Shown here: piece after piece, positions 2,010-14,508 of the stretch
How the letters are laid out: every line of letters starts with the position of its first letter
Numbering within the stretch: position 1 is the first letter of the stretch
Source: Vitrella brassicaformis CCMP3155
Taxonomy: Eukaryota > Protista > Chromerida
DNA length: 64,000 bases
Direction of reading: 5' to 3'
NCBI GenBank assembly: GCA_001179505.1
Contig: CDMY01000499.1
Span: 248,001 to 312,000 of the forward strand
The notes under the pieces: model-generated
Told to the model about the DNA's origin: nothing
Seen by the model: only the letters and a program-made list of their open reading frames with translations
Database searches by the model: none
Position numbers and translations under genes: made by a program

Positions 2010-2368
2010 GATTCCCGACAGATGACTTCGCCCGATCTCGATAGTTGACGAGTCGTAGCGCCAAGGGACGCTGCGAAAGCGCCAGGAATCGGGGGATCCC
2101 TTCGCAGCTCGCCCACCTGCGAGCTTCCAAGCTCGCAAATCTCGAATCCCGTTGATTTTGCCTCCTGTCGTCCCTTGGACGGCGCTCAGCCGACATCTGT
2201 CCTTTCTGTGGGCACAAATCGTGAGGAGAGTGGTGTTGGTTTCGGAAGGAGGCCTGCCGGTGTCCTCTTGCGGCGATGTCTGGCTCGACATCGTCGTTGA
2301 CGCCCGAGTGTGGCGCTCGTAGCGAGCGGGGCGGGTGTCTTGACGGCGGTGGTGGTGGGGCCACTCCG

Positions 2369-5300
2369 ATGCACTGCCTGGACGCGCTGTTCAACGAGCT
2401 GACGTGTATCCTCTACAACCGGAACGACCCCCAGAGGCTCAACAAGTGCCAGAGGGTACTCGAGAGCTACAGGGGCACAGGTCAGTCAGCTCGACACACA
2501 CAACACACACAGCACAACGACAGACAGACACGGTTGTCTTTGGTGTCTTGTGCCGTGTGTGCAGACTGGATACTGCACAGCACCATCCCGGAGATCAAGG
2601 GCTTCCAAATCTATGGCTACAGCCGGTAAGAACGACACAAAGACAGACAACCGCAACACAACACCGCCCTCACAGCGCCACGTGTCTACTCTGCTTACTC
2701 GCCTCGCTCTCTGTCTTGCGTGTGTGTGTTGTGTTGTCCAACAGTGCGCAAGTGCGTTCGCAGCCCGATTTGTTTTCTCTGTTGATCCTGACGTGGTCGC
2801 CCAAGTCGCGGAGTGCCATCCACAACCACCCGTGCGAGCGGTGCTTCCTCATGCCACTCCAGGGCGACCTCAGCGAAGTCAGATACTCAGTGGTCGAAGA
2901 AGGACCTGACCAGAGGTCGGTGGGCAACACGGCTCCCTCCCTCCCTCCCTCCCTGCGCACACACACACAGGGATGGGCGTGTCGTGTGCATATGGTCTCG
3001 TCTGGTGTGAGTCAGGGTGCGTGAGATTGGTCGTGACCGCATTCCGCAGAACAAGGCTTGCTGGATCGACGACTCGCACGGATGGTACGTCGTCATGGAG
3101 TGAGATGCAGACAGACAGACAGACAGACGGAATCGTGTGTATGTGTGTTGACACGCAGGCACGCTATAGTCAACGACAGCCATGGCCTGTCGGTGTCGCT
3201 GCACCTCTACATCCCCTCGTTCACCAAGTGAGTGACAACCACACGCACACACACACACACACACACAGCTTGGTCATGTGTTGGTTGGCCTGTGTGTGTT
3301 CAGGTGCAAGATTGTTGACCCGTCGTCGCACAGCATCCGCTGGGTGAACTGCTTCCCCACACAGACGTCGAGGTTCCAACCACTGCACGAACGGTCAGCA
3401 AAGAGAGAGAGAGAGAGAGAGAGCCACCAGCCAGCCAGCCAGCCAGACAGGTGGCAATCTGCTGATGTTGGCCGTGTTTGTGTGTGCACGTCTGGTCTGC
3501 AGTGTGTTTGACACGGCGCGCAACTACCTGAAGAGCCTCGACTGCCCCGCCAGCCGCCCCGTCATCAAACTCAGGACCAAGTGCGACATCGAAGAGATAT
3601 TCAATGAGAAGTAAGCAAAGAACTTAACTTACGTCACCTCACCGATTGATTGATTGATGCACCAAAGATCGGATGGATGGATGGATGGACGTGTGTGTGT
3701 TTGTGTGAAGGTGTTCGTTGGAGTTTTCTGACAATGCGGCCCCGATGGACGACGACTCCATTCTCGCTGCCGTCCAGAACACCTGCGACTTCTCCACAAA
3801 TACCGGTGGGTGTGTCAGGCAGCTGAGCTCAGCTGCCATCCCATGCAGACACAGCAGACAGAAACCAAACCCACACAGGGCAGATGGATGGTCCATATAT
3901 CGCTGGCTGGTTGCTTGCGTGTATCATGATTATCGATCAGGTCACTTGTACTTCTTCAACCAGCTGTTTGCCCGTGCTGACCCGCTGGCCGTGGCGGCCG
4001 ACTGCCTCTCCAACTGCCTCAACGCAAACCTCCTCACCTTCGAGGTAATATGTACCAACCACGGCACGGCAGGCACCCTCTCATCGTGATGTCCCTCCCC
4101 TTGTCAGATGGCCCCCGTGTTTCTGCTGATGGAGAAGCGGCTGCTGCAGCACATGGCGTCATTCCTCGGCTGGTACACCCATTTCGACCCCAACTCGCAA
4201 GACAACGACACGCCGCAGGAGTTCTCACTCTGCGGCGACCGACGGGCGCCCTCACCGGCAGAGCAGCCCACGGCGGCGTCGACCACCGACGAGTCGGCGC
4301 CCAACCTGCTCCCGCCCCCTGCAGACACCTCCAGCAAGCTCAGCGAGGCCTCCACCGACGCATCGCAGTCGCCACGGCTCGATGCCCAGAACCACCCTCC
4401 GTCGACTCGGTGCAGTGCCGGCACAGGGGAGAGGGAGCGGTGTGGGCATGTGGGCGATGTGAGCCGTGAGGTGGTGCCGAGTGTGCTGGTGGATCGGCTG
4501 CGTCGGTCGGATCGGAAGCTGTCGGCGCCCTTTGAGACGTTTGACGGGCTGCTGAATCCAGGGGGGGCGATATCGAACGTCATGGCCCTCAACGTCGCCA
4601 GGCACCACATCGTGCCCGAGGTCAAAGTGAAGGGGGTGTACGGCACGCCCCCACTCGTCATATTCACCTCCGAGCAGGTACGCGAGCGCACACACATTCC
4701 CACCCACTCAGGCGCTCTCACCTCATCGACGTGTGTGTGCGTGTGTGTGTGGATCAGGGCCACGAGTCGATCGAGAAGGCCACAGCGCTGCTGGGTCTCG
4801 GCGTGGAGAACGTGGTGCACGTGCCGGTGTTGCCGTCGACCAACGCCATGGACCCCCAGGCCCTCGCCCACGCCGTGCAGCAGGCGGCCGACGCCGGCAA
4901 GCGCCCCTTCTTCGTCAACTGCACGGCCGCCACGACGGTTGCGGGCGCGTTTGACCCGTTCGAGGCCATTCGAGACGTGTGTGACGAGTGGGGCATGTGG
5001 ATGCACGTCGACGGGGCCGTGGGGGCGTCCTTCCTGCTGCCCCAGGAGGAATACTATAAGAAGCTCTGCAGGTGAGGGACTGGAAGGGAGGTGTATGTGG
5101 AGAGAGGAGAGGTGGCAGGCAAGGCACGTATCTATCGCATTTCGTTGTTGGTGCCGTTGCATCAGGGGCATGGATCGCGCCGACTCTGTGAGCTGGAATC
5201 TGCACAAGCTCCTCGGGGTGCCACTGCAGTGCTCCGCACTGCTCACCAGACACCCTGGTACCGTTCGCACCCCCCACCACGCACACACACAGAGACTCTC

Positions 5301-5723
5301 ACCGACACACGCACACCGTGCTTTGTGTGTCGTCCGTTACGTCTTTCAGGTTTGCTGTCGCGCACGCACAGCACGGTGGCGTGTCCGAATCTGTTCAGCC
5401 ACATCGACACGCCCCTGTGCGACCTCGACTCGTGCTGCTCCACCTTCCAGTACGGCAGGCGGGCCGACGCATTTAAAGCCTGGTGCCTCTGGAAAAAGGT
5501 AATGAGTACCTTCACACGCACACACGCACACACACGCGAGGCACACCTCACCCGCTACTGTGGTGTGTGAATGATCTGGCTTGGCTGGTGTGGGTGTCTG
5601 GCTGTTTGTTGTGTGGTCAGTTGGGTGACCAGGGAATGGCTAATCGCATTCGGCTGGTCTACACCCACACGATGGAGCTGGCCGAGCTCATCCGGACGTT
5701 CCCCAAGAAGTTCTCTTGCCCTG

Positions 5724-5757
<34 letters not shown>

Positions 5758-6597
5758 GCAATCGTCGAACAAGGAGTGTGTGTGGTGTGTGGTGTGTGCC
5801 ACCGGGCAGGTCGTGGTGTGAATCTGCCGACCGAGGTGGAAGTTGAGGAGTCGGTGCCCACCGGCATGCCCAGTGACATCAACCAGGATGCATTCCACCT
5901 GGTATGGGAGCCGGTGAGCTGCAACTGCTGCTTCTGGTGGGTGCCTTACGACCTGCGTAAGCCGTTCGCCCAGCACGGCTGGCAGCACCCCCTCCTGCAC
6001 GAGCACCTCATACACGTCGCACCCGCCATGAAGAGGCAAATGCTCACAGAGGGATCCATCATGGTACTCACACACACACATGGGCAGGCAGGCAGGCAGG
6101 AACATACCCAGTCGGTGTGTGTGTGTGTGTCGGTGTGAGCACAGGTCGACTACCACACGTTGGCCGGGCGTCCCTTCTTCTGGCGTCTGCCTTTGGTCAA
6201 CCCCGACATCTGCCGTGACGACATCTTCAACGTCCTCAGGATCATCAACCGGATCGGTTAGCACACAAACAAAAGCCACACACACCACACCACACCACAC
6301 CACACACGTCGCCAGGTGCATCAAACCCAACACTCTCTCGGTCTCTCTCTCTCCCTCCCCGTGACCATCTCAGGCACCTCTTGTTTTCCGCCCGGCTCTT
6401 ACGCCGTGTCTGTGAGTGAGGCCGATCTGTCCATCGAGGGCGGCCCCATGTGGCAGACCACCATCAACGACGGCGACAGCTCCTCCTGCTCGAGGTCCTC
6501 TGCACGCCGTGTGGCGAGCTTCCCCGGCCCCGAGATGGCGCACGCGGAGGAGATCCGGGAGAGCACTGCAGCCCTCCCCTCCATATGCACATTCTGA
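2369..6597 (+). CDS. CDO/CSAD: Cysteine dioxygenase - PLP-dependent group II decarboxylase (CSAD/GAD-like) fusion protein, ~898 aa
   Basis: Exons 2369-2480, 2565-2625, 2745-2915, 3016-3084, 3159-3227, 3304-3393, 3503-3610, 3711-3805, 3941-4044, 4108-4677, 4758-5071, 5166-5257, 5350-5498, 5621-5723, 5810-6063, 6145-6256, 6374-6597; all GT-AG, phases compatible, total 2697 nt. CDO motifs: YSR, LLILTW, IHNHPCERCF, GWH, SLHLY. Decarboxylase motifs: GHLYFFNQLF, TFEMAPVF, NPGGAISN, TAATTVAGAFDP, MHVDGAVG, SVSWNLHK (PLP Lys codon 5206-5208), QYGRRADAFK. If the last intron is not spliced the protein ends at TAG 6259-6261 (825 aa). Confidence 0.9.
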
Positions 6598-6654
6598 CTG
6601 ACCGATGGCCGGGTGCGGCTGGTGGCGTGAATGAATGTTTATATTTTTTCGCCA

Positions 6655-6954
6655 NNNNNNNNNNNNNNNNNNNNNNNNNNNNNNNNNNNNNNNNNNNNNN
6701 NNNNNNNNNNNNNNNNNNNNNNNNNNNNNNNNNNNNNNNNNNNNNNNNNNNNNNNNNNNNNNNNNNNNNNNNNNNNNNNNNNNNNNNNNNNNNNNNNNNN
6801 NNNNNNNNNNNNNNNNNNNNNNNNNNNNNNNNNNNNNNNNNNNNNNNNNNNNNNNNNNNNNNNNNNNNNNNNNNNNNNNNNNNNNNNNNNNNNNNNNNNN
6901 NNNNNNNNNNNNNNNNNNNNNNNNNNNNNNNNNNNNNNNNNNNNNNNNNNNNNN
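6655..6954. other. Assembly gap (300 N)
   Basis: Run of N, followed by a G run. Confidence 1.
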
Positions 6955-8727
6955 GGGGGTTGGCGATTGGTGACTGGTGTTTGCTTGAGTCGGCAATTGA
7001 TCGTGAGTATCCATGCCATGGTGTTGTGTTTCTTGCTTGCTCCTTCATGACTCATGATTCAATGTATTGGTAGATTGGTAGGTGGTGCTTGGGTGGGGTG
7101 TGTGGGGGAGAGCTGGTGGGGTCACGTCACGTGGCAGCTGCGATAGACGGACGATTGGTTGGTGCATGGCTTGCACAGAGAGACCAGTCCAGCTTCTGGA
7201 GGGAGGGAGGGAGGGAGGGAGGGAGCAGGCCTGTGTGTATTATCTATGTAAGGGGCATCTCGCTCGCCTCGTGCGTTGGCTGCCCTGCTGCCCGCCTGCC
7301 GCCTGCCTACATCTCCCCTCTGTGTCTGTGTGGTGGCCAGGTGTATGTTTGTTTGTGCGGTGCATCATGCGGTATGATGGTGCGGTTCTCTGCTCAGAGA
7401 GAGGGGCGCAGACGAGCGAACAACTGCGGTGTGTTGAGTTTGTTCTGTCTGTCTGTGGGGTGGGGTCGGGTCGCTTGGCTTATTGCTACGTGCGTGTCGG
7501 CTTTATCCACCCATTTCATCCGCGGAGGGCTCTTGCAGCCGGTCTTTATCTCCTTTTGCCTGACTGACTGACTCACCGACCCACCACACCGGTTGCCTAC
7601 GTAATTCACCATGTCCACCCGCCGCCTGAGGCATACACGCCCTACCTACCGACACACGATGCATCACACACCTACACACACACACACACACACACACGCC
7701 CCCTTCTCTCTCTTTGTGAGCTGTTGGTTTACGCCAGTAAGGGTGACCTTGTTTGGCTTGGCTTGGCTTGTTTTATCACGGGAAATGCCGCCTGGCCTGG
7801 TGCGCATATCGACCGACCAGCACGGCTATCTCAGCAAAGGGCAAGGACGTATGAGATCCGGGACTTTTCAGGTTCCATACTGCGTTGCTCGATGTTGTGG
7901 TGAGCCATGCACGTCAGTCAAAGCGTCAACGGCCGGGCGCAGTGTTGCCTGCCTCTTCTCACACACACATCTATCTATGGCGCCTTCATGCGGGCGGTTT
8001 CCTTGCTTGCCTCCCTGCGTCTGCATGGCCTGCAGACGCCTACCTACATGCTCTCAAATGGATGGATGGATGGATGAAGGGGGCTCGCCTGCGACGACGC
8101 AGATTTTGTTGTATCGAGACCTCATAGATGCCTTCTTGCCTTGCTTTGCCTCATTCCTGATGCGCCCGTCATGCCGAGTGTCGGTTCCAGATGCGCCGTG
8201 GCTTCTGCTGGGTGAATGCTTGATGGGCCGCTGTATCGCGGGCAGTCCACACGTCAGTGCCTTCCTTATGGTCTATGCAGTTGTGAGCGGGGGAGCCAGT
8301 GAGCCGTCTGGGCTCTATCTAAGTCAGAGGGGAGAGAGACAGTTTTTTCGTCGGGACTGACGTGGGCGTGACTGTATGCGTGTGTGACTGAGAGCCGGTG
8401 AGATGGTCACATATCCAGATCTGTGTTCGTCCCGTCCCGAGCATTCCACCACGAGACATCTATTACTCGTCGGCACGGAGCGGTCCGCACTGGCCGGCCC
8501 AAACTTCAACACACATTCGACAGACAGACAGACCGAGAGACAAGTCAGAGCACATCGTGTGATAGAGAGACACTTGACGCGCAAAATGGCGTGCGTCGCA
8601 TGCGAAACACAATTCGCTCCACCACAAAGACACAGACACACACAAGTCCGACAAGCCTCATCATCCACCAACCCACCCCCCCTCACCCGCCATGTGCCCA
8701 CACAGGTCGACGGCACCACTCACCCAC

Positions 8728-10051
8728 TCACTGCCGGAGCATTGCCTCTTCCTCCGTGGTGTCTCCGCCCTTGGGCGTCATCATGCCGTCGTCGAGCTTG
8801 ATACGCCAGATGTGGTTGGGCGTCGTGGCGAACAGGTAGCCGCGCCCCTCCCCCTCCATCCCAAGGCCCACATTGACGGCGTGCGATGACCCCCCGAGCC
8901 GCATCAGACCCACCACCTCTCGAGCAGCGGGGTCGATGACGTACAGCCCGCCAGGCCCTCCCGCGAAGATCATGCCAGAGGGGGCCGCCACCATGCCGTC
9001 GATAACGTGACCAAACACGCCGGGGTCCTTCTCCGTGTCGTAGTTGACCGCAACGTACTTGGCGTAGTCGGCGTCGGAGATGACGAGGTCCGCGTCGGTC
9101 ACGTCGTCCAGCGACTGAGGGGCGCTGACAGTGCCGTTGTCTGCAATGGGGAATTGGTACAGCCGCGTGCCGGGGCCGTCGCCCTCTGCGCGCGAGTCGA
9201 TGACGTACAGAGTGCGGCCGTCGTGGGAGATGGCGATGCCATTCGGCCGCTTGAGGGCCGGCGTGAGGAGCTCCAGATGGTTTTCCTCCCCCTCCTCGGT
9301 CACACACAGCCGGTACACGCCGTGGTAGCCCAGCTCGGAGAACTTGTCCAGCGTCGGCTCGCTCTCCAGCCCGTTGAGCCAGCCGTATGGCGGGTCGGTG
9401 AAGAATATCTCATACAAGACAGTCGAGTTGAGCTTCCGCGCGCCCTCCCCCTGACCGCTGAAGACGGCCGCGTCGTTGGGCGAGTTGAGTCGCGTGCCGT
9501 TGTACTCGGTCGCCTCCTCGACCAGGTCGTCGCCGTACTTGTTGTCTGCAGTGAAGGACGTGTTGAGGTGGGCCTTTACGAGCCGGCGGCCCTTCTGCAG
9601 ACAGATGTGGACAATGTTGGGGTCCAGGGGGTCGACGGCCATGCCGTTGGCGCCCTCGGCCGCGTTGGAGATGAGGGCCACGGTGGTGTTGGTGGAAGGC
9701 GTGTACTGCAAAATAGAGTTCAGCCCTGACACACAGGACAGAACAGACATCGCCCTCCACACACACACACACACACACGCAGCCAGGCAGCTTCGTCGTA
9801 AGCACGTGATACACACCAGGGTCAACGAAGAGCAGCGACTTGGACGGCTCGTGCCACACGGGCCCCTCAGGGTAGCCGAGGCCGCTCACGACCAGCTCTG
9901 CCTCCTCCTGAGCGAATATCTTGCCCACTGATGCGTTGGTCAGCAGCTCAAAGCCGCTGCGGCTGGCGTCGAGGCCTTTCCAGTTCGGCTCGAACTGTGC
10001 TGCGGCCAGGGACGCGCACAGTACGGCGAGGGCAACGAGGCGGAAGGTCAT
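8728..10051 (-). CDS. Secreted SMP-30/gluconolactonase/LRE-family beta-propeller protein
   Basis: Exons 10051-9817 and 9725-8728. Signal peptide MTFRLVALAVLCASLAAAQ; family motifs YPEGPVW, GANGM, NSPND, FFTDPPYG, RPNGIAISHDGRTLYV, IDGM with the metal-binding E/N/N/D residues present. Confidence 0.85.
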
Positions 10052-10132
10052 GCCGATCCACCAGAGTTGATATCTAGAGGACAGTCTGGCTTTTTTGTGT
10101 TTGCTTCCTTTTTTGGGGGGGGGGGGGGGGGG

Positions 10133-10432
10133 NNNNNNNNNNNNNNNNNNNNNNNNNNNNNNNNNNNNNNNNNNNNNNNNNNNNNNNNNNNNNNNNNNNN
10201 NNNNNNNNNNNNNNNNNNNNNNNNNNNNNNNNNNNNNNNNNNNNNNNNNNNNNNNNNNNNNNNNNNNNNNNNNNNNNNNNNNNNNNNNNNNNNNNNNNNN
10301 NNNNNNNNNNNNNNNNNNNNNNNNNNNNNNNNNNNNNNNNNNNNNNNNNNNNNNNNNNNNNNNNNNNNNNNNNNNNNNNNNNNNNNNNNNNNNNNNNNNN
10401 NNNNNNNNNNNNNNNNNNNNNNNNNNNNNNNN
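10133..10432. other. Assembly gap (300 N)
   Basis: Run of N preceded by an 18-G homopolymer. Confidence 1.
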
Positions 10433-10509: not shown

Positions 10510-13500
10510 ATGGATGGGCCGCCCTTGCAAGAGAGCGCCTGCTCGCTTCCTGCCGCCGAATCTTCTCCGCCTTCAAGACGCACCGCCATGACCAAACGCG
10601 CCTCGCCAAGCGCCTCGCCAAGGCGACCCCTGTCCTTCTCCATCTGTGGTGAGCCAGTAGATGACAGACAACCATGCCTTTCTGCAGCGCTGCAGGCCAC
10701 TGCGCTAGCTATTGTTTGTTGCGCTGTCGCCGTGTTCAGCTGCCGTGCTGCTGTATGTGGTCCCTTTCTTCTCGTGCAATAATTCCAATGTGGCAGCAGC
10801 ACCGGCCGGCTCGAATGGCATTTCCCTGTCCGAAGACAAGTGGTGGAACCCCTTCCCGGCCGACAACAGCAGCAGTGGCGAGGGGGGGAGGGCCCCTTCT
10901 GCCACTGCTACTGCTACTGCTGCTGCCACTTCGACAGGGGGCAACAACGTCAGAGGTCAGGACCCCAGCAACCACGACCACAAGGTGTCGGCATACGCCT
11001 CAGCAAACAGCACACAAGGCGCTGAGGAGCTCACCGACGCCGACCTATTGACCAATCCTCTCGCCGCCAAGACCCAGAGGGAAGAGGAGCCGGAGGAGGC
11101 AGAGGTGGAGGTGGATGTGGCGGCAGAAGGAGAGGAAGAACAAACACCGCCCCCGGCCGACACCGGCAGTGTCAACGAGCCCGAGCCCGAGCCCGAGACC
11201 ATGCCCGAGAAGAAGGCAAACGTGGCGATGCGGTCGGTGTGTTTCGAGTCGGGTCTCGAGTATGGGATCAAGGGCCAGGAGGGCACAGCCGCCCCTCTGG
11301 CCGTGGTGGGGGAGGTGCCTGGCGTGGCGTCCGCCCCCGACTGTCAGCAGGAGTGCCTTGCGCAGGAGGCGTGCACGCACTTCACATGGGACTCGCAGGA
11401 GCTGCTGTGCAGCCTCAAGAACTTGCCGAAGAGTGAGAGCGAGCAGGAGACCCTCAAGGCCGACTCGACCGTCACATCAGGCCCTCGTGTGTGCGGTGAG
11501 ATGCCATGCCCCACCCAGCCACCCACCTAGCCGCTGGCAGGCACTCACACACTTCTGATCTGATTGGTGTCTGCGCGTGCCTGCCTGCCTGCAGGTGTGG
11601 ACATCCCTTATTGCGCCGAGCTGGACGTTGACATAGATGCGGAGGGCAGCGGGATGGTGGAAGACTCGCCCTCGCCCAAGGCGTGTTCTGAGTCGTGCCG
11701 CGAGACTCGAGAGTGCGACTTGTTCGTGTGGGGATGGGGCGGCGAGAACACCACTTGCTGGATGAAGAAGCTGCCCCTCAATGGGAAGATCCCCAAGGCC
11801 GGCGTCGTGTCGGGCACCAAATCATGCTCTTGTAAGCAGAGCGGTGTGGTGACAAACAGTGAACACTCACAGCACCAATCTATCAAATCAATCGTCTTTT
11901 CCCTCCCTCCCTTTTGTCTGTCGTCAGCGCCCGACATTGGGCACACGTACCAGAAGGCCTCCATGAAGCCATTCGCCTCGAGCTCACTGGCCATCCCGGT
12001 CCCCGACGACCCGCCATGCTTCACCCTTGGCCAGTCCATCAAGGGCACAGAGGAGGCCGTCCTTGAGAGGACCGAGTCGGCCGAGCGGTGCCAGACGCTC
12101 TGCCAGATGTCCGGGACCTGCAAGGCCTTCACATTCGACGTGCTCACTAACATGTGTCGGCTCGAGGCGGACGAGGGGGCTTCGCGTGTGGAGGCCCTGG
12201 CGACTTTTGTGTCGGGCCCCCGCACCTGTGGGTGGCCTCGATTCACCGACGATGCCGGGGCGGCCGGGACAGAGGGGCTGTCAACGGAGACGGCCGGCAA
12301 TGTGACCCCTCAGGCTGGCGCCGCGATCGGTGCGGACGACTGGTTCGTGGAGGCGACTTTGGCCAAGATGGACCTGAAGCAGAAGATCTCGCAGATGGTC
12401 ATCGTGCCCATCGTGTTCCTGCAAGACCCGGCCATGCTGGAGGAGTGGTCCATCGGTGGCCTCTTGTGGATCCCCGGCTGGTTCAGAGGCGAGAAGTCGT
12501 CCAAGGGCATCGTCAACGCGTGGGACAACTTCTACGACAACGCCATCAAGCCCACAGGCGGGCGGGTCCCCATCCCGCCCCTCATCGCCACGGACGCCAT
12601 CCACGGCCACAACAACATGCCCGGCGCGACACTATTCCCACATAACATAGGTCTCGGGTGTGCCAACGACACCGACCTGATGCGGCGGATCGGCAGGGCA
12701 ACGGCTGCTGAGGTGTCTGTCACGGGCGTGGACTGGACCTTGGCGCCCACTGTGGCCGTGACGCGTGACGACAGGTGGGGGCGGACCTACGAGTCGTTCG
12801 CTGAGGAGCCATACACCGCCAAGAGACTCATCGGCGCCCTCGTCAGGGGGATTCAGGTGTGCTGGTGAACGGAGAGAGAGACACGCCGACACAGAGAGGT
12901 GTGTGTGTGTGAGTGCGCAGGGCGAGTCGGATGACCCCAAGACCTTTTTGAAGGACGGTAAGTTGCTGACGACGTGCAAGCACTTCATCGGCGACGGTGC
13001 GCCGGTGGGCGGTATCACCGACGGCAACGTGCTGCTGGGCGAGGAAGAGCTGAGACGAGTGCACCTGCCGCCGTTCAGGGCGTGCATGTCGGATGGCAAG
13101 GCGCAGGCAGTGATGCCCTCGTTCACCCTCTTCAACGGCGTGCACATGCACGCCTACAAATTCCTTATCACCGACGTGCTCAAGGTGACTTGATAGATAC
13201 CCATTTGTCGCGCATCCTCTCTCTCTGTTGGCTCCTTCAGCACACATTTGACTTTGACGGCTTGGTGGTGGGAGATTGGAGTGCGCACAGGGCGGTCAAG
13301 GGCTGCACGGTCATCGACTGCCCGGAGACCATCAATGCGGGCGTGGACATGCTCATGGTCGGCGACGGCATGGACAACTGGCAGAAGTTCATCACCAATA
13401 CCATGCGGCGCGTCAGGGAAGGCACCATCCCCCTCTACCGGATCGACGACGCCGTCCGACGCATCCTCACCGTCAAGATGAGGTACGGCCTCATCGGACC

Positions 13501-14508
13501 CGACGGCTCCAAAGTCAAGGGCAAGCCATCCACACGGAAATACGCCAACCAATACGACCTCCTCCACTCAACCGAGCACGCCGCACTCGCGCGCGAGGCC
13601 GTCCGCAAGTCACTCGTCCTTCTGAAGAACAACAACGCCGCGCTGCCACTGCCCAAGGGCGGGAGTGTGTGGGTGGTGTCTCGGCTGACGGCCGGCCGCA
13701 AGGTGCTGCCAGGGAAGCCGCCGTACGAGGGCGCCGACTCGCCTTTGGCCAACTGGATCCCCGCCATGACGGGGGCGTGGTCGCTGGAGTGGCAGGGCGA
13801 CAACATCGGCAACAAGGAGTTCCCTCAGGCCACGTCGGTGTGGAAGGGCATCAAGCTTAAGGCCGCTCACTACGGCGGCAGTGCGTACCTGAGCGAGATG
13901 GAGGCGGACGACAGGCCCCCTGAGGCCGTCGACACGGTGGTGGTGGTGCTGGGGGAGCTGCCCTATGCCGAGGTGTATGGCGACCTCGGAGAGACCAGCC
14001 TGGCACTGCACGCCAGGTGGCCAACGCACCTGTGTGTGTGATGTGATGGACTGATGCATTTCTCCCTACCTATGTGTGTGGTGTCTGTCTGACCGTCAGG
14101 TACCCCCGTGACCTCGAGCTGCTGGATAAGGTCAAGGCGACTGTGTCGACGAGCACCAAAGTGGTGTGTGTGCTGCTGTCCGGCCGCCCGCTGTACGTCA
14201 ACCCCCATCTCAACCGATGCGACGCCTTCGTGGCCGCCTGGCTGCCGGGCACCGAAGGCGGCCTGGGCATCGCTGACGTCCTCTACGGCGACAGACCCTT
14301 CTCGGCCAAACTCAGCTACTCGTGGCCAGCACGGCCCTGCCAGGCCGTGGTCAACGATGGGAGCGGTGAGGTCCCGCTGTTCCCCTTCGGCCATGGGTTC
14401 ACTTATGAGGAGGGTGCGCCTGAGCTGGGGTGGCTGGAGGAGTTCTGGGCGGAGGAGTGCGCCAACCAGGGCATCGTCATGCGAAAGCGATTCGAGCAGA
14501 GCCAATGA
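10510..14508 (+). CDS. Three PAN/Apple domains + GH3 beta-glucosidase/beta-glucan exohydrolase; N-terminal hydrophobic segment; start uncertain
   Basis: Three Cys-patterned Apple repeats (C...CQQECLAQEAC.HFTW...C.LK...SGPRVC and two similar). GH3 motifs DAIHGHNN, FPHNIGLG, APTVAVTRDDRWGRTYESF, KHFIGDG, nucleophile in VVGDW (13274-13276), AVRKSLVLLKN, acid/base in GELPYAE (13970-13972), AAWLPGTEG, LFPFGHG. Introns start at 11496, 11832, ~12857, ~13185, 14017. The frames of 10510-10782 and 10709 onward do not join cleanly, so the 5' end is unresolved. Confidence 0.85.

What the first reader, a model, noticed from the sequence alone, without database searches (positions are those of the whole stretch)
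2369..6597. Natural cysteine dioxygenase-decarboxylase fusion: candidate single-polypeptide hypotaurine/taurine synthase
Seen in sequence: the fragmented ORF track hides that 17 phase-compatible exons make one ~898-aa frame. Residues 1-~190 are a complete CDO cupin: Y58/R60 equivalents (YSR), Fe ligands H86/H88 (codons 2821, 2827) and H140 (3160), C93 (2842) and the S-H-Y triad (SLHLY, 3196-3210). The frame runs with no stop through exons 6-7 (...FQPLHER|VFDTARNYLK...) into a full group II PLP decarboxylase. Established: CDO oxidises cysteine to cysteine sulfinate and CSAD decarboxylates it to hypotaurine; in animals these are separate genes. Inference: the fusion links consecutive steps and may channel the intermediate, giving a marine alveolate a compact route to a sulfur osmolyte/antioxidant. 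I cannot confirm it is unreported, as similar fusions may exist in other algae.
Basis: partly seen in the sequence, partly recalled or inferred. Interest (0 to 1): 0.92.

Follow-up and report, generated by a model that had tools for sequence, protein, structure and literature searches.

The report
Fused cysteine dioxygenase–decarboxylase gene
The alga Vitrella brassicaformis makes one spliced mRNA for a single protein that joins cysteine dioxygenase to a CSAD/GAD-type decarboxylase; the same fusion occurs across its parasite relatives, but the decarboxylase half lacks a normally universal catalytic tyrosine, so its product is uncertain.

Summary
Seventeen GT..AG exons (2369-6597) give an 898-aa protein. 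Spliced RNA contigs from four runs join exon 6 (last exon of the cysteine dioxygenase, CDO, part) to exon 7 (first decarboxylase exon) in frame. The public database holds exactly this protein. The organism is Vitrella brassicaformis CCMP3155; its record CEM18328.1 has 929 aa because it starts at an upstream in-frame ATG.

The CDO half keeps every catalytic residue of mammalian CDO1. The C-terminal half belongs to the GAD/CSAD/GADL1 group II PLP decarboxylases; its best solved match is human cysteine sulfinic acid decarboxylase (CSAD), and it keeps the PLP Lys, Asp and His.

The fusion is not unique. The same architecture occurs in Colpodella, Selenidium, three Perkinsus species, four coccidians and several metagenomic protists. 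All fused decarboxylases included in the tree (coccidians left out) form one clade, which suggests a single old fusion. These proteins carry only automated names, and ten literature searches found no description.

The hypotaurine-synthase reading is plausible but unproven. The selectivity motif is F-x19-N-x-L, not the CSAD form F-x19-S-x-Y. The whole fused clade has lost the conserved catalytic loop (Asn632 replaces the Tyr). In coccidians the PLP lysine is also gone.

The scan had already noted the motif on this same window.

The parts
2144..6654 (+). Extent of the mature mRNA as seen in assembled RNA contigs (5' UTR from about 2144; 3' UTR runs up to the assembly gap that starts at 6655)
   Evidence: contigs of 2980/2980/2837 nt in runs X1, X7, X8
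2276..2368 (+). In-frame upstream ATG and 31 extra N-terminal codons, used by the public model CEM18328.1 (929 aa). It is not hydrophobic and has no signal-peptide look
2369..3393 (+). Exons 1-6 (2369-2480, 2565-2625, 2745-2915, 3016-3084, 3159-3227, 3304-3393): cysteine dioxygenase type I cupin, residues 1-190
2821..2844 (+). Codons for Fe ligands His84 and His86 (rat H86/H88) and for Cys91 (rat C93, cross-link partner)
3160..3210 (+). His139 (rat H140, third Fe ligand) and Ser151-x-His153-x-Tyr155 (rat S153/H155/Y157)
3394..3502 (+). Intron 6. It lies inside the conserved junction block PLHER|VFD that links the two enzymes and is removed in all RNA contigs
3503..6256 (+). Exons 7-16 (3503-3610, 3711-3805, 3941-4044, 4108-4677, 4758-5071, 5166-5257, 5350-5498, 5621-5723, 5810-6063, 6145-6256): group II PLP decarboxylase of the GAD/CSAD/GADL1 family
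3967..4035 (+). Substrate-selectivity positions: Phe268 (3967-3969), Asn288 (4027-4029), Leu290 (4033-4035), giving F-x19-N-x-L
   Evidence: motif definition from the preprint read
4177..4542 (+). 122-residue Ser/Pro/Asp/Arg-rich insertion (residues 317-438) within exon 10; predicted disordered and not conserved among relatives
5206..5208 (+). Codon of the PLP-binding lysine (Lys602, in SWNLHK)
5370..5465 (+). Degenerate catalytic loop (residues 626-657). Asn632 (5388-5390) sits where all unfused relatives have the catalytic Tyr, and DTGDK is replaced by DSCCS
6374..6597 (+). Exon 17: C-terminal tail. Its start (CFPPGS) is conserved in relatives; the rest is disordered. The stop codon is at 6595-6597

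Best explanation
This is one expressed nuclear gene of Vitrella brassicaformis. It encodes a two-enzyme polypeptide.

The N-terminal 190 residues are an Arg-type, Cys-Tyr-type cysteine dioxygenase. It should oxidise L-cysteine to cysteine sulfinate using Fe(II) and O2.

The N-terminal helix of an acidic-amino-acid PLP decarboxylase of the GAD/CSAD/GADL1 family follows directly, with no spacer. That half most likely takes the cysteine sulfinate made next door and removes its alpha-carboxyl, giving hypotaurine, the precursor of taurine.

What is shown: the fusion itself, its expression, its conservation across Myzozoa, and intact active-site residues in both halves.

What is inferred: the substrate and product of the decarboxylase half (from the fusion partner and family membership), any channelling, and any osmolyte or antioxidant role.
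For: - Spliced RNA contigs in four runs join the two halves in frame.
- The identical 898-aa protein is in the public collection, and the 929-aa genome model is CEM18328.1.
- Pfam finds CDO_I plus Pyridoxal_deC, both above their cut-offs.
- The CDO half aligns to rat and human CDO1 with Y58, R60, H86, H88, C93, H140, S153, H155 and Y157 all identical. These residues are invariant in 12 fused homologues.
- The decarboxylase half matches human CSAD best (2jis, 2e-85; Foldseek 2.6e-27), closely followed by GADL1, mouse CSAD and GAD67/65.
- The PLP Lys602, Asp568 and the FWR arginine (Arg801) are invariant or nearly invariant in 14 non-coccidian fusions. The His485 position shows His in every row but one, where the Perkinsus chesapeaki model has a gap.
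- The same CDO_I plus Pyridoxal_deC architecture occurs in Colpodella, Selenidium, three Perkinsus species, four coccidians and metagenomic protists.
- The junction block PLH(E/D)R(V/I)F is gap-free across them.
- All fused decarboxylases in the tree form one clade with SH-aLRT 100.
- A fungal CSAD-related enzyme reported as a major determinant of taurine production also has Asn at the middle motif position (Y-x19-N-x-H; preprint 10.64898/2026.08.27.747329). The Asn is therefore compatible with a role in taurine synthesis.
Against: - The CSAD signature F-x19-S-x-Y is not met: Vitrella has F-x19-N-x-L.
- The catalytic-loop Tyr (CSAD chain position K+30) is Asn632, and the conserved YLFQxDK...DTGDK loop is degenerate in every member of the fused clade. 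It is kept in every unfused relative examined, and the Tyr even in the aromatic-decarboxylase outgroups.
- In DOPA decarboxylase this Tyr is responsible for C-alpha protonation, and Y332F stops amine formation (PMC7497351).
- The clade lies outside animal CSAD/GADL1 and GAD, so there is no orthology-based assignment.
- No metabolite data for hypotaurine or taurine in chromerids or perkinsids were found.
- In coccidians the decarboxylase half has lost the PLP lysine while CDO stays intact. The CDO half can therefore be useful without a working decarboxylase.
Confidence: 0.58

Rival explanations
1. The decarboxylase half has changed chemistry. Without the loop Tyr it cannot protonate C-alpha. 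It therefore carries out decarboxylation-dependent oxidative deamination, or abortive transamination, of cysteine sulfinate. The product would be sulfinoacetaldehyde, expected to break down to acetaldehyde and sulfite, plus ammonia. On this reading the fusion is a cysteine-disposal or sulfite-releasing route rather than an osmolyte synthase.
For: The catalytic-loop Tyr is lost (Asn632) and the loop is degenerate in the whole fused clade, while the PLP Lys, Asp and His stay conserved. The clade has a long stem branch of 0.99. DDC Y332F and the natural Phe-for-Tyr aromatic aldehyde synthases show exactly this switch (PMC7497351).
Against: The precedent is in aromatic decarboxylases with Phe at this position, not in acidic-amino-acid decarboxylases with Asn or a rebuilt loop. 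Colpodella, P0151 and P0152 keep a Tyr near this position, so the clade is not uniform. Another residue, water, or the fused CDO domain could supply the proton. The breakdown of sulfinoacetaldehyde is stated from memory.
Confidence: 0.15
2. The two halves work on unrelated substrates. The decarboxylase acts on aspartate, glutamate or cysteate (giving beta-alanine, GABA or taurine), and the fusion serves co-regulation or assembly rather than consecutive catalysis.
For: The motif mixes a CSAD-like Phe with a GAD-like Asn. PDB scores for CSAD, GADL1 and GAD are close, at 290 to 269 bits. The family is known to be promiscuous among acidic amino acids: GADL1 acts on Asp, cysteine sulfinate and cysteine (PMC7367687).
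Against: A fusion conserved from Perkinsus to chromerids with a gap-free junction is the classic signature of enzymes in one pathway, and cysteine sulfinate is the only product of the CDO half. No GAD-type Ser at position 94 is seen in any fused member.
Confidence: 0.12
3. In Vitrella, as in coccidians, the decarboxylase half is a non-catalytic scaffold (for example a dimerisation module for the CDO half).
For: Four coccidian orthologues read H-A-F instead of H-K-L at the PLP lysine, and the three aligned have also lost FFNQLF, yet all four keep all CDO residues. The catalytic loop is degenerate in all fused members.
Against: Vitrella and 13 other non-coccidian fusions keep Lys602, Asp568, Asn599 and many other active-site-region residues invariant over a very deep divergence, and His485 in all but one gapped row. 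That is not expected for a dead domain.
Confidence: 0.06
4. The fusion is an artefact: two adjacent genes merged by annotation, read-through or chimeric assembly.
For: An ATG at 3465 opens a frame that runs into exon 7, and the unspliced reading of exon 6 stops at 3509-3511. A two-gene reading is therefore formally possible from the DNA alone.
Against: Intron 6 is precisely removed, with zero intron depth, in contigs from four runs, at least three samples and three studies. The junction sequence is conserved in more than 15 homologues from independent genomes and transcriptomes, including intronless ones.
Confidence: 0.02

Closest known systems
Mammalian two-enzyme taurine pathway: CDO1 plus CSAD (PDB 2b5h/2ic1 and 2jis/6zek)
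   Same: The same two folds in the same pathway order. The CDO half has the identical 3-His Fe site, Arg60/Tyr58 and the Cys93-Tyr157 pair. The decarboxylase half has the PLP Lys, Asp and His and an FFR-type arginine. CSAD is the best solved match.
   Different: Here the two are one polypeptide with no spacer. The decarboxylase has F-x19-N-x-L instead of F-x19-S-x-Y, Asn instead of the catalytic-loop Tyr, a 122-residue disordered insertion and a C-terminal tail. It is not an orthologue of animal CSAD.
Cyanobacterial CDO and CSAD of Synechococcus (Agnello et al. 2013; known here only as cited)
   Same: A microbial CDO/CSAD route to hypotaurine, with a variant selectivity motif (W-x19-S-x-Y).
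   Different: No fusion is mentioned where these enzymes are cited. The Ser and Tyr of the motif are kept there, whereas here they are Asn and Leu.
Candida albicans Csd1, a CSAD-related enzyme (preprint 10.64898/2026.08.27.747329)
   Same: A divergent CSAD-family enzyme with Asn at the middle motif position (Y-x19-N-x-H), reported as a major determinant of taurine production.
   Different: It is described as a CSAD-related protein, with no fusion to a CDO mentioned. The state of its catalytic loop was not examined here.
DOPA decarboxylase Y332F and natural aromatic aldehyde synthases (PMC7497351)
   Same: Group II PLP decarboxylases in which the mobile-loop Tyr is absent. They decarboxylate and then oxidatively deaminate instead of releasing the amine.
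   Different: They act on aromatic substrates and have Phe at the position within an otherwise conserved loop. Here the whole loop is rebuilt, and the substrate is presumably an acidic sulfinate.
Synthetic cdo/csad taurine pathway engineered in Chlamydomonas (Tevatia et al. 2019; title seen in the reference list of PMC13474568)
   Same: Co-expression of the same two activities in an alga to make taurine.
   Different: It is man-made, and the paper itself was not read. The Vitrella gene is a natural and ancient fusion.

Membership tests
Cysteine dioxygenase type I (Pfam PF05995), Arg-type true CDO | Sequence matches the family model above the curated cut-off | tested here: met
   62 bits against a cut-off of 23, residues 50-166. 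Rat and human CDO1 are the best PDB matches, 8e-19 to 3e-18.
Cysteine dioxygenase type I (Pfam PF05995), Arg-type true CDO | Three-histidine Fe(II) site (rat H86, H88, H140) | tested here: met
   His84, His86 and His139 align to them and are invariant in 12 fusions.
Cysteine dioxygenase type I (Pfam PF05995), Arg-type true CDO | Arg60 and Tyr58, which bind the cysteine carboxylate. These distinguish CDO from Gln-type mercaptopropionate dioxygenases (the distinction is stated from memory) | tested here: met
   The Y56-S-R58 motif aligns to rat Y58-T-R60 and is invariant.
Cysteine dioxygenase type I (Pfam PF05995), Arg-type true CDO | Cys93-Tyr157 cross-link pair and the Ser153-His155-Tyr157 triad | tested here: met
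   Cys91, Ser151, His153 and Tyr155 are present and invariant. Formation of the thioether itself is not testable here.
Cysteine dioxygenase type I (Pfam PF05995), Arg-type true CDO | Oxidises L-cysteine to cysteine sulfinate | not testable with these tools
   Needs an enzyme assay.
Group II PLP decarboxylase, GAD/CSAD/GADL1 branch (Pfam PF00282) | Sequence and fold match | tested here: met
   196 bits against a cut-off of 27. CSAD, GADL1 and GAD are the top PDB hits by sequence and by fold. In the tree it sits inside the 99-supported ingroup that excludes the aromatic decarboxylases.
Group II PLP decarboxylase, GAD/CSAD/GADL1 branch (Pfam PF00282) | PLP lysine, PLP-ring Asp and the stacking His | tested here: met
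   Lys602 and Asp568 are conserved in all non-coccidian fusions. The His485 position is His in all but one row, which has a gap.
Group II PLP decarboxylase, GAD/CSAD/GADL1 branch (Pfam PF00282) | Mobile catalytic loop with the C-alpha proton-donor Tyr (DDC Y332; the Tyr of xYLFQ in GAD and CSAD) | tested here: not met
   Asn632 aligns to the CSAD Tyr. The loop motif is kept in every unfused family row (the aromatic outgroups keep the Tyr) and in no fused row. The role of the Tyr is taken from PMC7497351.
Cysteine sulfinic acid decarboxylase (CSAD) in the strict sense | Selectivity motif F/W-x19-S-x-Y | tested here: not met
   Vitrella has F268-x19-N288-x-L290. Perkinsus has F-x19-N-x-Y. The motif is as quoted.
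Cysteine sulfinic acid decarboxylase (CSAD) in the strict sense | Orthology with animal CSAD | tested here: not met
   The fused clade is sister to unfused protist and green-alga enzymes and lies outside the animal CSAD/GADL1 and GAD clades.
Cysteine sulfinic acid decarboxylase (CSAD) in the strict sense | Decarboxylates cysteine sulfinate to hypotaurine | not testable with these tools
   Supported only indirectly, by the conserved fusion to CDO.

The most novel reading that the evidence does not exclude
After fusing to CDO, the fused clade lost the catalytic loop, and with it the proton-donor Tyr, of its decarboxylase. One reading is that the CDO domain or the conserved junction now closes the neighbouring active site and supplies the missing function, making a built-in channel. 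The other is that the enzyme no longer releases an amine at all and turns cysteine, via cysteine sulfinate, into sulfinoacetaldehyde (then sulfite plus acetaldehyde). That would be a previously undescribed O2-dependent route of cysteine breakdown in Myzozoa.
Probability: 0.15. Interest if true: 0.8.

Novelty: new variant of a known kind. Interest (0 to 1): 0.55.

Why it matters
Both enzymes are textbook, but a natural single-chain CDO-decarboxylase appears not to have been studied.

Its conservation from Perkinsus (an oyster parasite living in taurine-rich tissue) through chromerids, colpodellids and gregarines to coccidia makes it a lineage marker. It is also direct genetic evidence that these protists oxidise cysteine to cysteine sulfinate and process it further.

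It offers a ready-made test case for substrate channelling between an Fe dioxygenase and a PLP enzyme.

It is also a natural experiment on what a GAD/CSAD-type enzyme does without its catalytic-loop tyrosine.

The dead decarboxylase half in coccidians shows a stepwise decay of the second activity.

Practical interest is modest: a compact one-gene route for engineering hypotaurine or taurine production, if the activity is confirmed.

Tried and rejected
- **Two-gene reading.** I considered a CDO ending at the stop at 3509-3511 and a decarboxylase starting at ATG 3465. The RNA contigs and the conserved junction reject it.
- **Exon 16 ending at TAG 6259-6261 (825 aa).** The RNA contigs splice 6256 to 6374, and the CFPPG motif of exon 17 is conserved.
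- **First laying of reads.** The joint table was swamped by microsatellite false joints at 3108-3128, 3671-3689 and 6083-6100. A narrower second laying gave clean pieces.
- **Pfam on single exons.** This was only weakly informative for the short exons. It was superseded once the whole protein was retrieved from the database.
- **NCBIfam.** No equivalog matched either half.
- **Literature.** Ten searches for a natural CDO-decarboxylase fusion, for CDO in Toxoplasma or Perkinsus, and for taurine or hypotaurine in Perkinsus or chromerids found nothing relevant. Agnello et al. 2013 is not held, so the motif is quoted second-hand.
- **Bacterial origin of the metagenome fusion P0016.** Rejected: its contig carries RabGAP-TBC, LRR and cytochrome-b5-desaturase genes, so it comes from a compact eukaryotic genome.
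- **P0184 and P0186 as unfused members of the clade.** Rejected: both are truncated gene calls that begin at the internal Met of CFLM.
- **Neighbouring genes.** The long ORFs within about 10 kb downstream show no obvious link to sulfur metabolism (judged by eye only).
- **Dinoflagellates and ciliates.** No fusion turned up, but the searches were capped at 8000 candidates, so absence is not shown.
Full report
**Observation**

I rebuilt the gene from the raw sequence. Seventeen exons have canonical GT..AG borders: 2369-2480, 2565-2625, 2745-2915, 3016-3084, 3159-3227, 3304-3393, 3503-3610, 3711-3805, 3941-4044, 4108-4677, 4758-5071, 5166-5257, 5350-5498, 5621-5723, 5810-6063, 6145-6256 and 6374-6597. 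They splice into one frame of 898 codons.

Sequencing runs that hold about half of the sampled words of the 4229-base query, roughly what a spliced mRNA should hold, were laid on the stretch. In runs X1, X7 and X8 a single contig (2980, 2980 and 2837 nt) covers 2144..6654 with the introns missing. The 535 contig letters between exon 3 and exon 10 equal the summed length of exons 4-9.

A second, narrower laying shows the critical junction directly. In four runs one contig covers 3304-3391 and 3502-3612 back to back. Depth inside intron 6 is zero. The overhanging letters are the end of exon 5 and the start of exon 8.

**Identity**

An exhaustive HMMER search with exon 11 returned an 898-aa protein that is 100% identical at residues 484-587, exactly as the model predicts. 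Cluster look-up shows the organism is Vitrella brassicaformis CCMP3155. The genome annotation CEM18328.1 (UniRef A0A0G4FUQ6, auto-named 'cysteine dioxygenase') has 929 aa because it starts at the in-frame ATG at 2276, and an MMETSP transcript also encodes it. The gene model is therefore already public. What is not public, as far as ten full-text searches show, is any description of it.

**The CDO half**

Pfam CDO_I scores 62 bits, residues 50-166. The alignment to rat CDO1 (2b5h) puts identical residues at Y58, R60, H86, H88, C93, H140, S153, H155 and Y157. All of these are invariant in 12 fused homologues. Every testable defining feature of an Arg-type, cross-link-capable cysteine dioxygenase is met.

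**The decarboxylase half**

Pfam Pyridoxal_deC scores 196 bits. The best solved relatives are human CSAD (2e-85), GADL1, mouse CSAD, GAD67 and GAD65, within about 20 bits of each other. Foldseek on an AlphaFold model gives the same order.

Lys602 (PLP), Asp568 and the FWR arginine (Arg801) are invariant or nearly so in 14 non-coccidian fusions. His485 is His in every row but one gapped Perkinsus chesapeaki model. That the arginine binds the distal acid group is from memory of the GAD structures.

A 122-residue Ser/Pro-rich insertion (residues 317-438) and the last 50 residues are predicted disordered.

**Distribution**

The CDO_I plus Pyridoxal_deC architecture is found in the following:
- Colpodella angusta
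- Selenidium pygospionis
- Perkinsus marinus, P. olseni and P. chesapeaki
- Hammondia, Neospora, Besnoitia and Cystoisospora
- two unnamed Logan assemblies
- a set of 740-791-aa metagenome proteins

One of the metagenome proteins lies on a compact, intron-poor eukaryotic contig next to RabGAP, LRR and cytochrome-b5-desaturase genes. Two apparent decarboxylase-only members are truncated gene calls.

A maximum-likelihood tree of 48 decarboxylase domains, with the four very divergent coccidians left out, gives these results:
- All fused sequences fall in one clade (SH-aLRT 100, stem length 0.99).
- The metagenome set is sister to Perkinsus.
- The fused clade is sister (99) to unfused protist and green-alga enzymes.
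- It lies outside the animal GAD and CSAD/GADL1 clades.

The junction block PLH(E/D)R(V/I)F is gap-free across the family, and Vitrella intron 6 lies inside it. The simplest reading is one fusion in an early myzozoan.

**Mechanism**

Shown: one polypeptide, both active-site sets intact in Vitrella, and deep conservation. Inferred: the CDO half makes cysteine sulfinate and the adjoining acidic-amino-acid decarboxylase consumes it, giving hypotaurine.

Three results temper this.

1. The CSAD selectivity signature F/W-x19-S-x-Y (quoted in the preprint 10.64898/2026.08.27.747329) reads F-x19-N-x-L in Vitrella and F-x19-N-x-Y in Perkinsus. The same preprint reports a fungal enzyme with Y-x19-N-x-H as a major determinant of taurine production, so Asn is not disqualifying.
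2. Every unfused family row keeps the mobile loop x-Y-[LI]-F-Q-x-D-K ... D-T-G-D-K, and the aromatic outgroups keep its Tyr. Every fused member has a loop of variable length and sequence. Vitrella has Asn632 where CSAD has the Tyr, within a single transcript-verified exon. In DOPA decarboxylase this Tyr is responsible for C-alpha protonation. Y332F and the natural Phe variants become decarboxylation-dependent oxidative deaminases that make aldehydes (PMC7497351). The product here could therefore differ from the plain amine.
3. In all four coccidians the PLP lysine is Ala (H-A-F for H-K-L), while all CDO residues persist. The CDO activity is useful on its own, and the second half can decay.

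I therefore put the hypotaurine-synthase reading at about 0.58. The rivals are altered chemistry (0.15), another acidic substrate (0.12), a scaffold-only domain (0.06) and an artefact (0.02). Nothing here tests channelling.

**Comparison with what is known**

The protein works like the mammalian CDO1 plus CSAD pair. The CDO half passes every residue-level membership test. The second half is a member of the GAD/CSAD/GADL1 branch by sequence and fold. It fails two defining features of a canonical CSAD (motif and orthology) and one of group II decarboxylases in general (the loop Tyr). It should therefore not be filed as 'a CSAD', although it may well work like one.

**Verdict**

This is a real, expressed and ancient natural fusion of two consecutive taurine-pathway enzymes. 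It is present in public databases only under automated names and is apparently undescribed. I rate it a new variant of a known kind, with an unexplained loss of the catalytic loop that makes the biochemistry worth testing. Interest is 0.55.

Noticed in passing
P0156, P0157, P0158, P0162 (Hammondia, Neospora, Besnoitia, Cystoisospora orthologues): In coccidians the fused protein is 1438-1645 aa. The PLP lysine is replaced by Ala (TW.AHAF). In the three aligned the FFNQLF and NPGGA motifs are also gone. All CDO catalytic residues are intact in the two checked by pattern (Hammondia, Cystoisospora) and in the alignment. It looks like a live dioxygenase tied to a dead decarboxylase.
   Followed up: partly
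P0011 (779 aa, ENA metagenome): A different fusion: a cystathionine-beta-synthase / cysteine-synthase / cysteate-synthase-like PALP domain joined to a GAD/CSAD-family decarboxylase. That decarboxylase has the motif Y-x19-N-x-H and a canonical AAYLFQ loop. This is a second, independent link between this decarboxylase family and sulfur amino-acid metabolism. The gene call seems to read through an intron and is cut at its end.
   Followed up: partly
L001:1137-3401 and the proteins P0016, P0183, P0185, P0187, P0188, P0189: Intronless 740-791-aa versions of the fusion sit on compact eukaryotic contigs with intergenic gaps of about 100 bp. In the tree they are sister to Perkinsus, so they probably come from uncultured perkinsid-like protists.
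   Followed up: partly
window 2481-6373 (the 16 introns of this gene): Many introns carry (AC)n near the donor and (GT)n near the acceptor, which can pair. Folding gives z-scores of -2.7, -2.3, -1.8, -1.7 and -1.6 for 5 of 16 introns. The rest are near zero or positive against dinucleotide-preserving shuffles, so any structure signal is weak and not general.
   Followed up: partly
window 2276-2368: An in-frame ATG 93 nt upstream of the CDO start lies inside the transcript and is the first ATG I could see in it by eye. It adds 31 Gly/Ser-rich residues with no hydrophobic stretch. Public models disagree on the start (898 against 929 aa).
   Followed up: partly
window 6655-6954 and about 10130-10430: There are runs of N (assembly gaps). 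The first starts right after the 3' UTR of this gene, and the RNA contigs extend about 8 letters into it.
   Followed up: no
window 8728-9825 (-) and 10712-14508 (+): The neighbouring long ORFs look, by eye only, like a beta-propeller lactonase/strictosidine-synthase-type protein and a cysteine-rich N-terminal module followed by a family-3 glycoside-hydrolase-like protein. Nothing suggests a link to sulfur metabolism.
   Followed up: no
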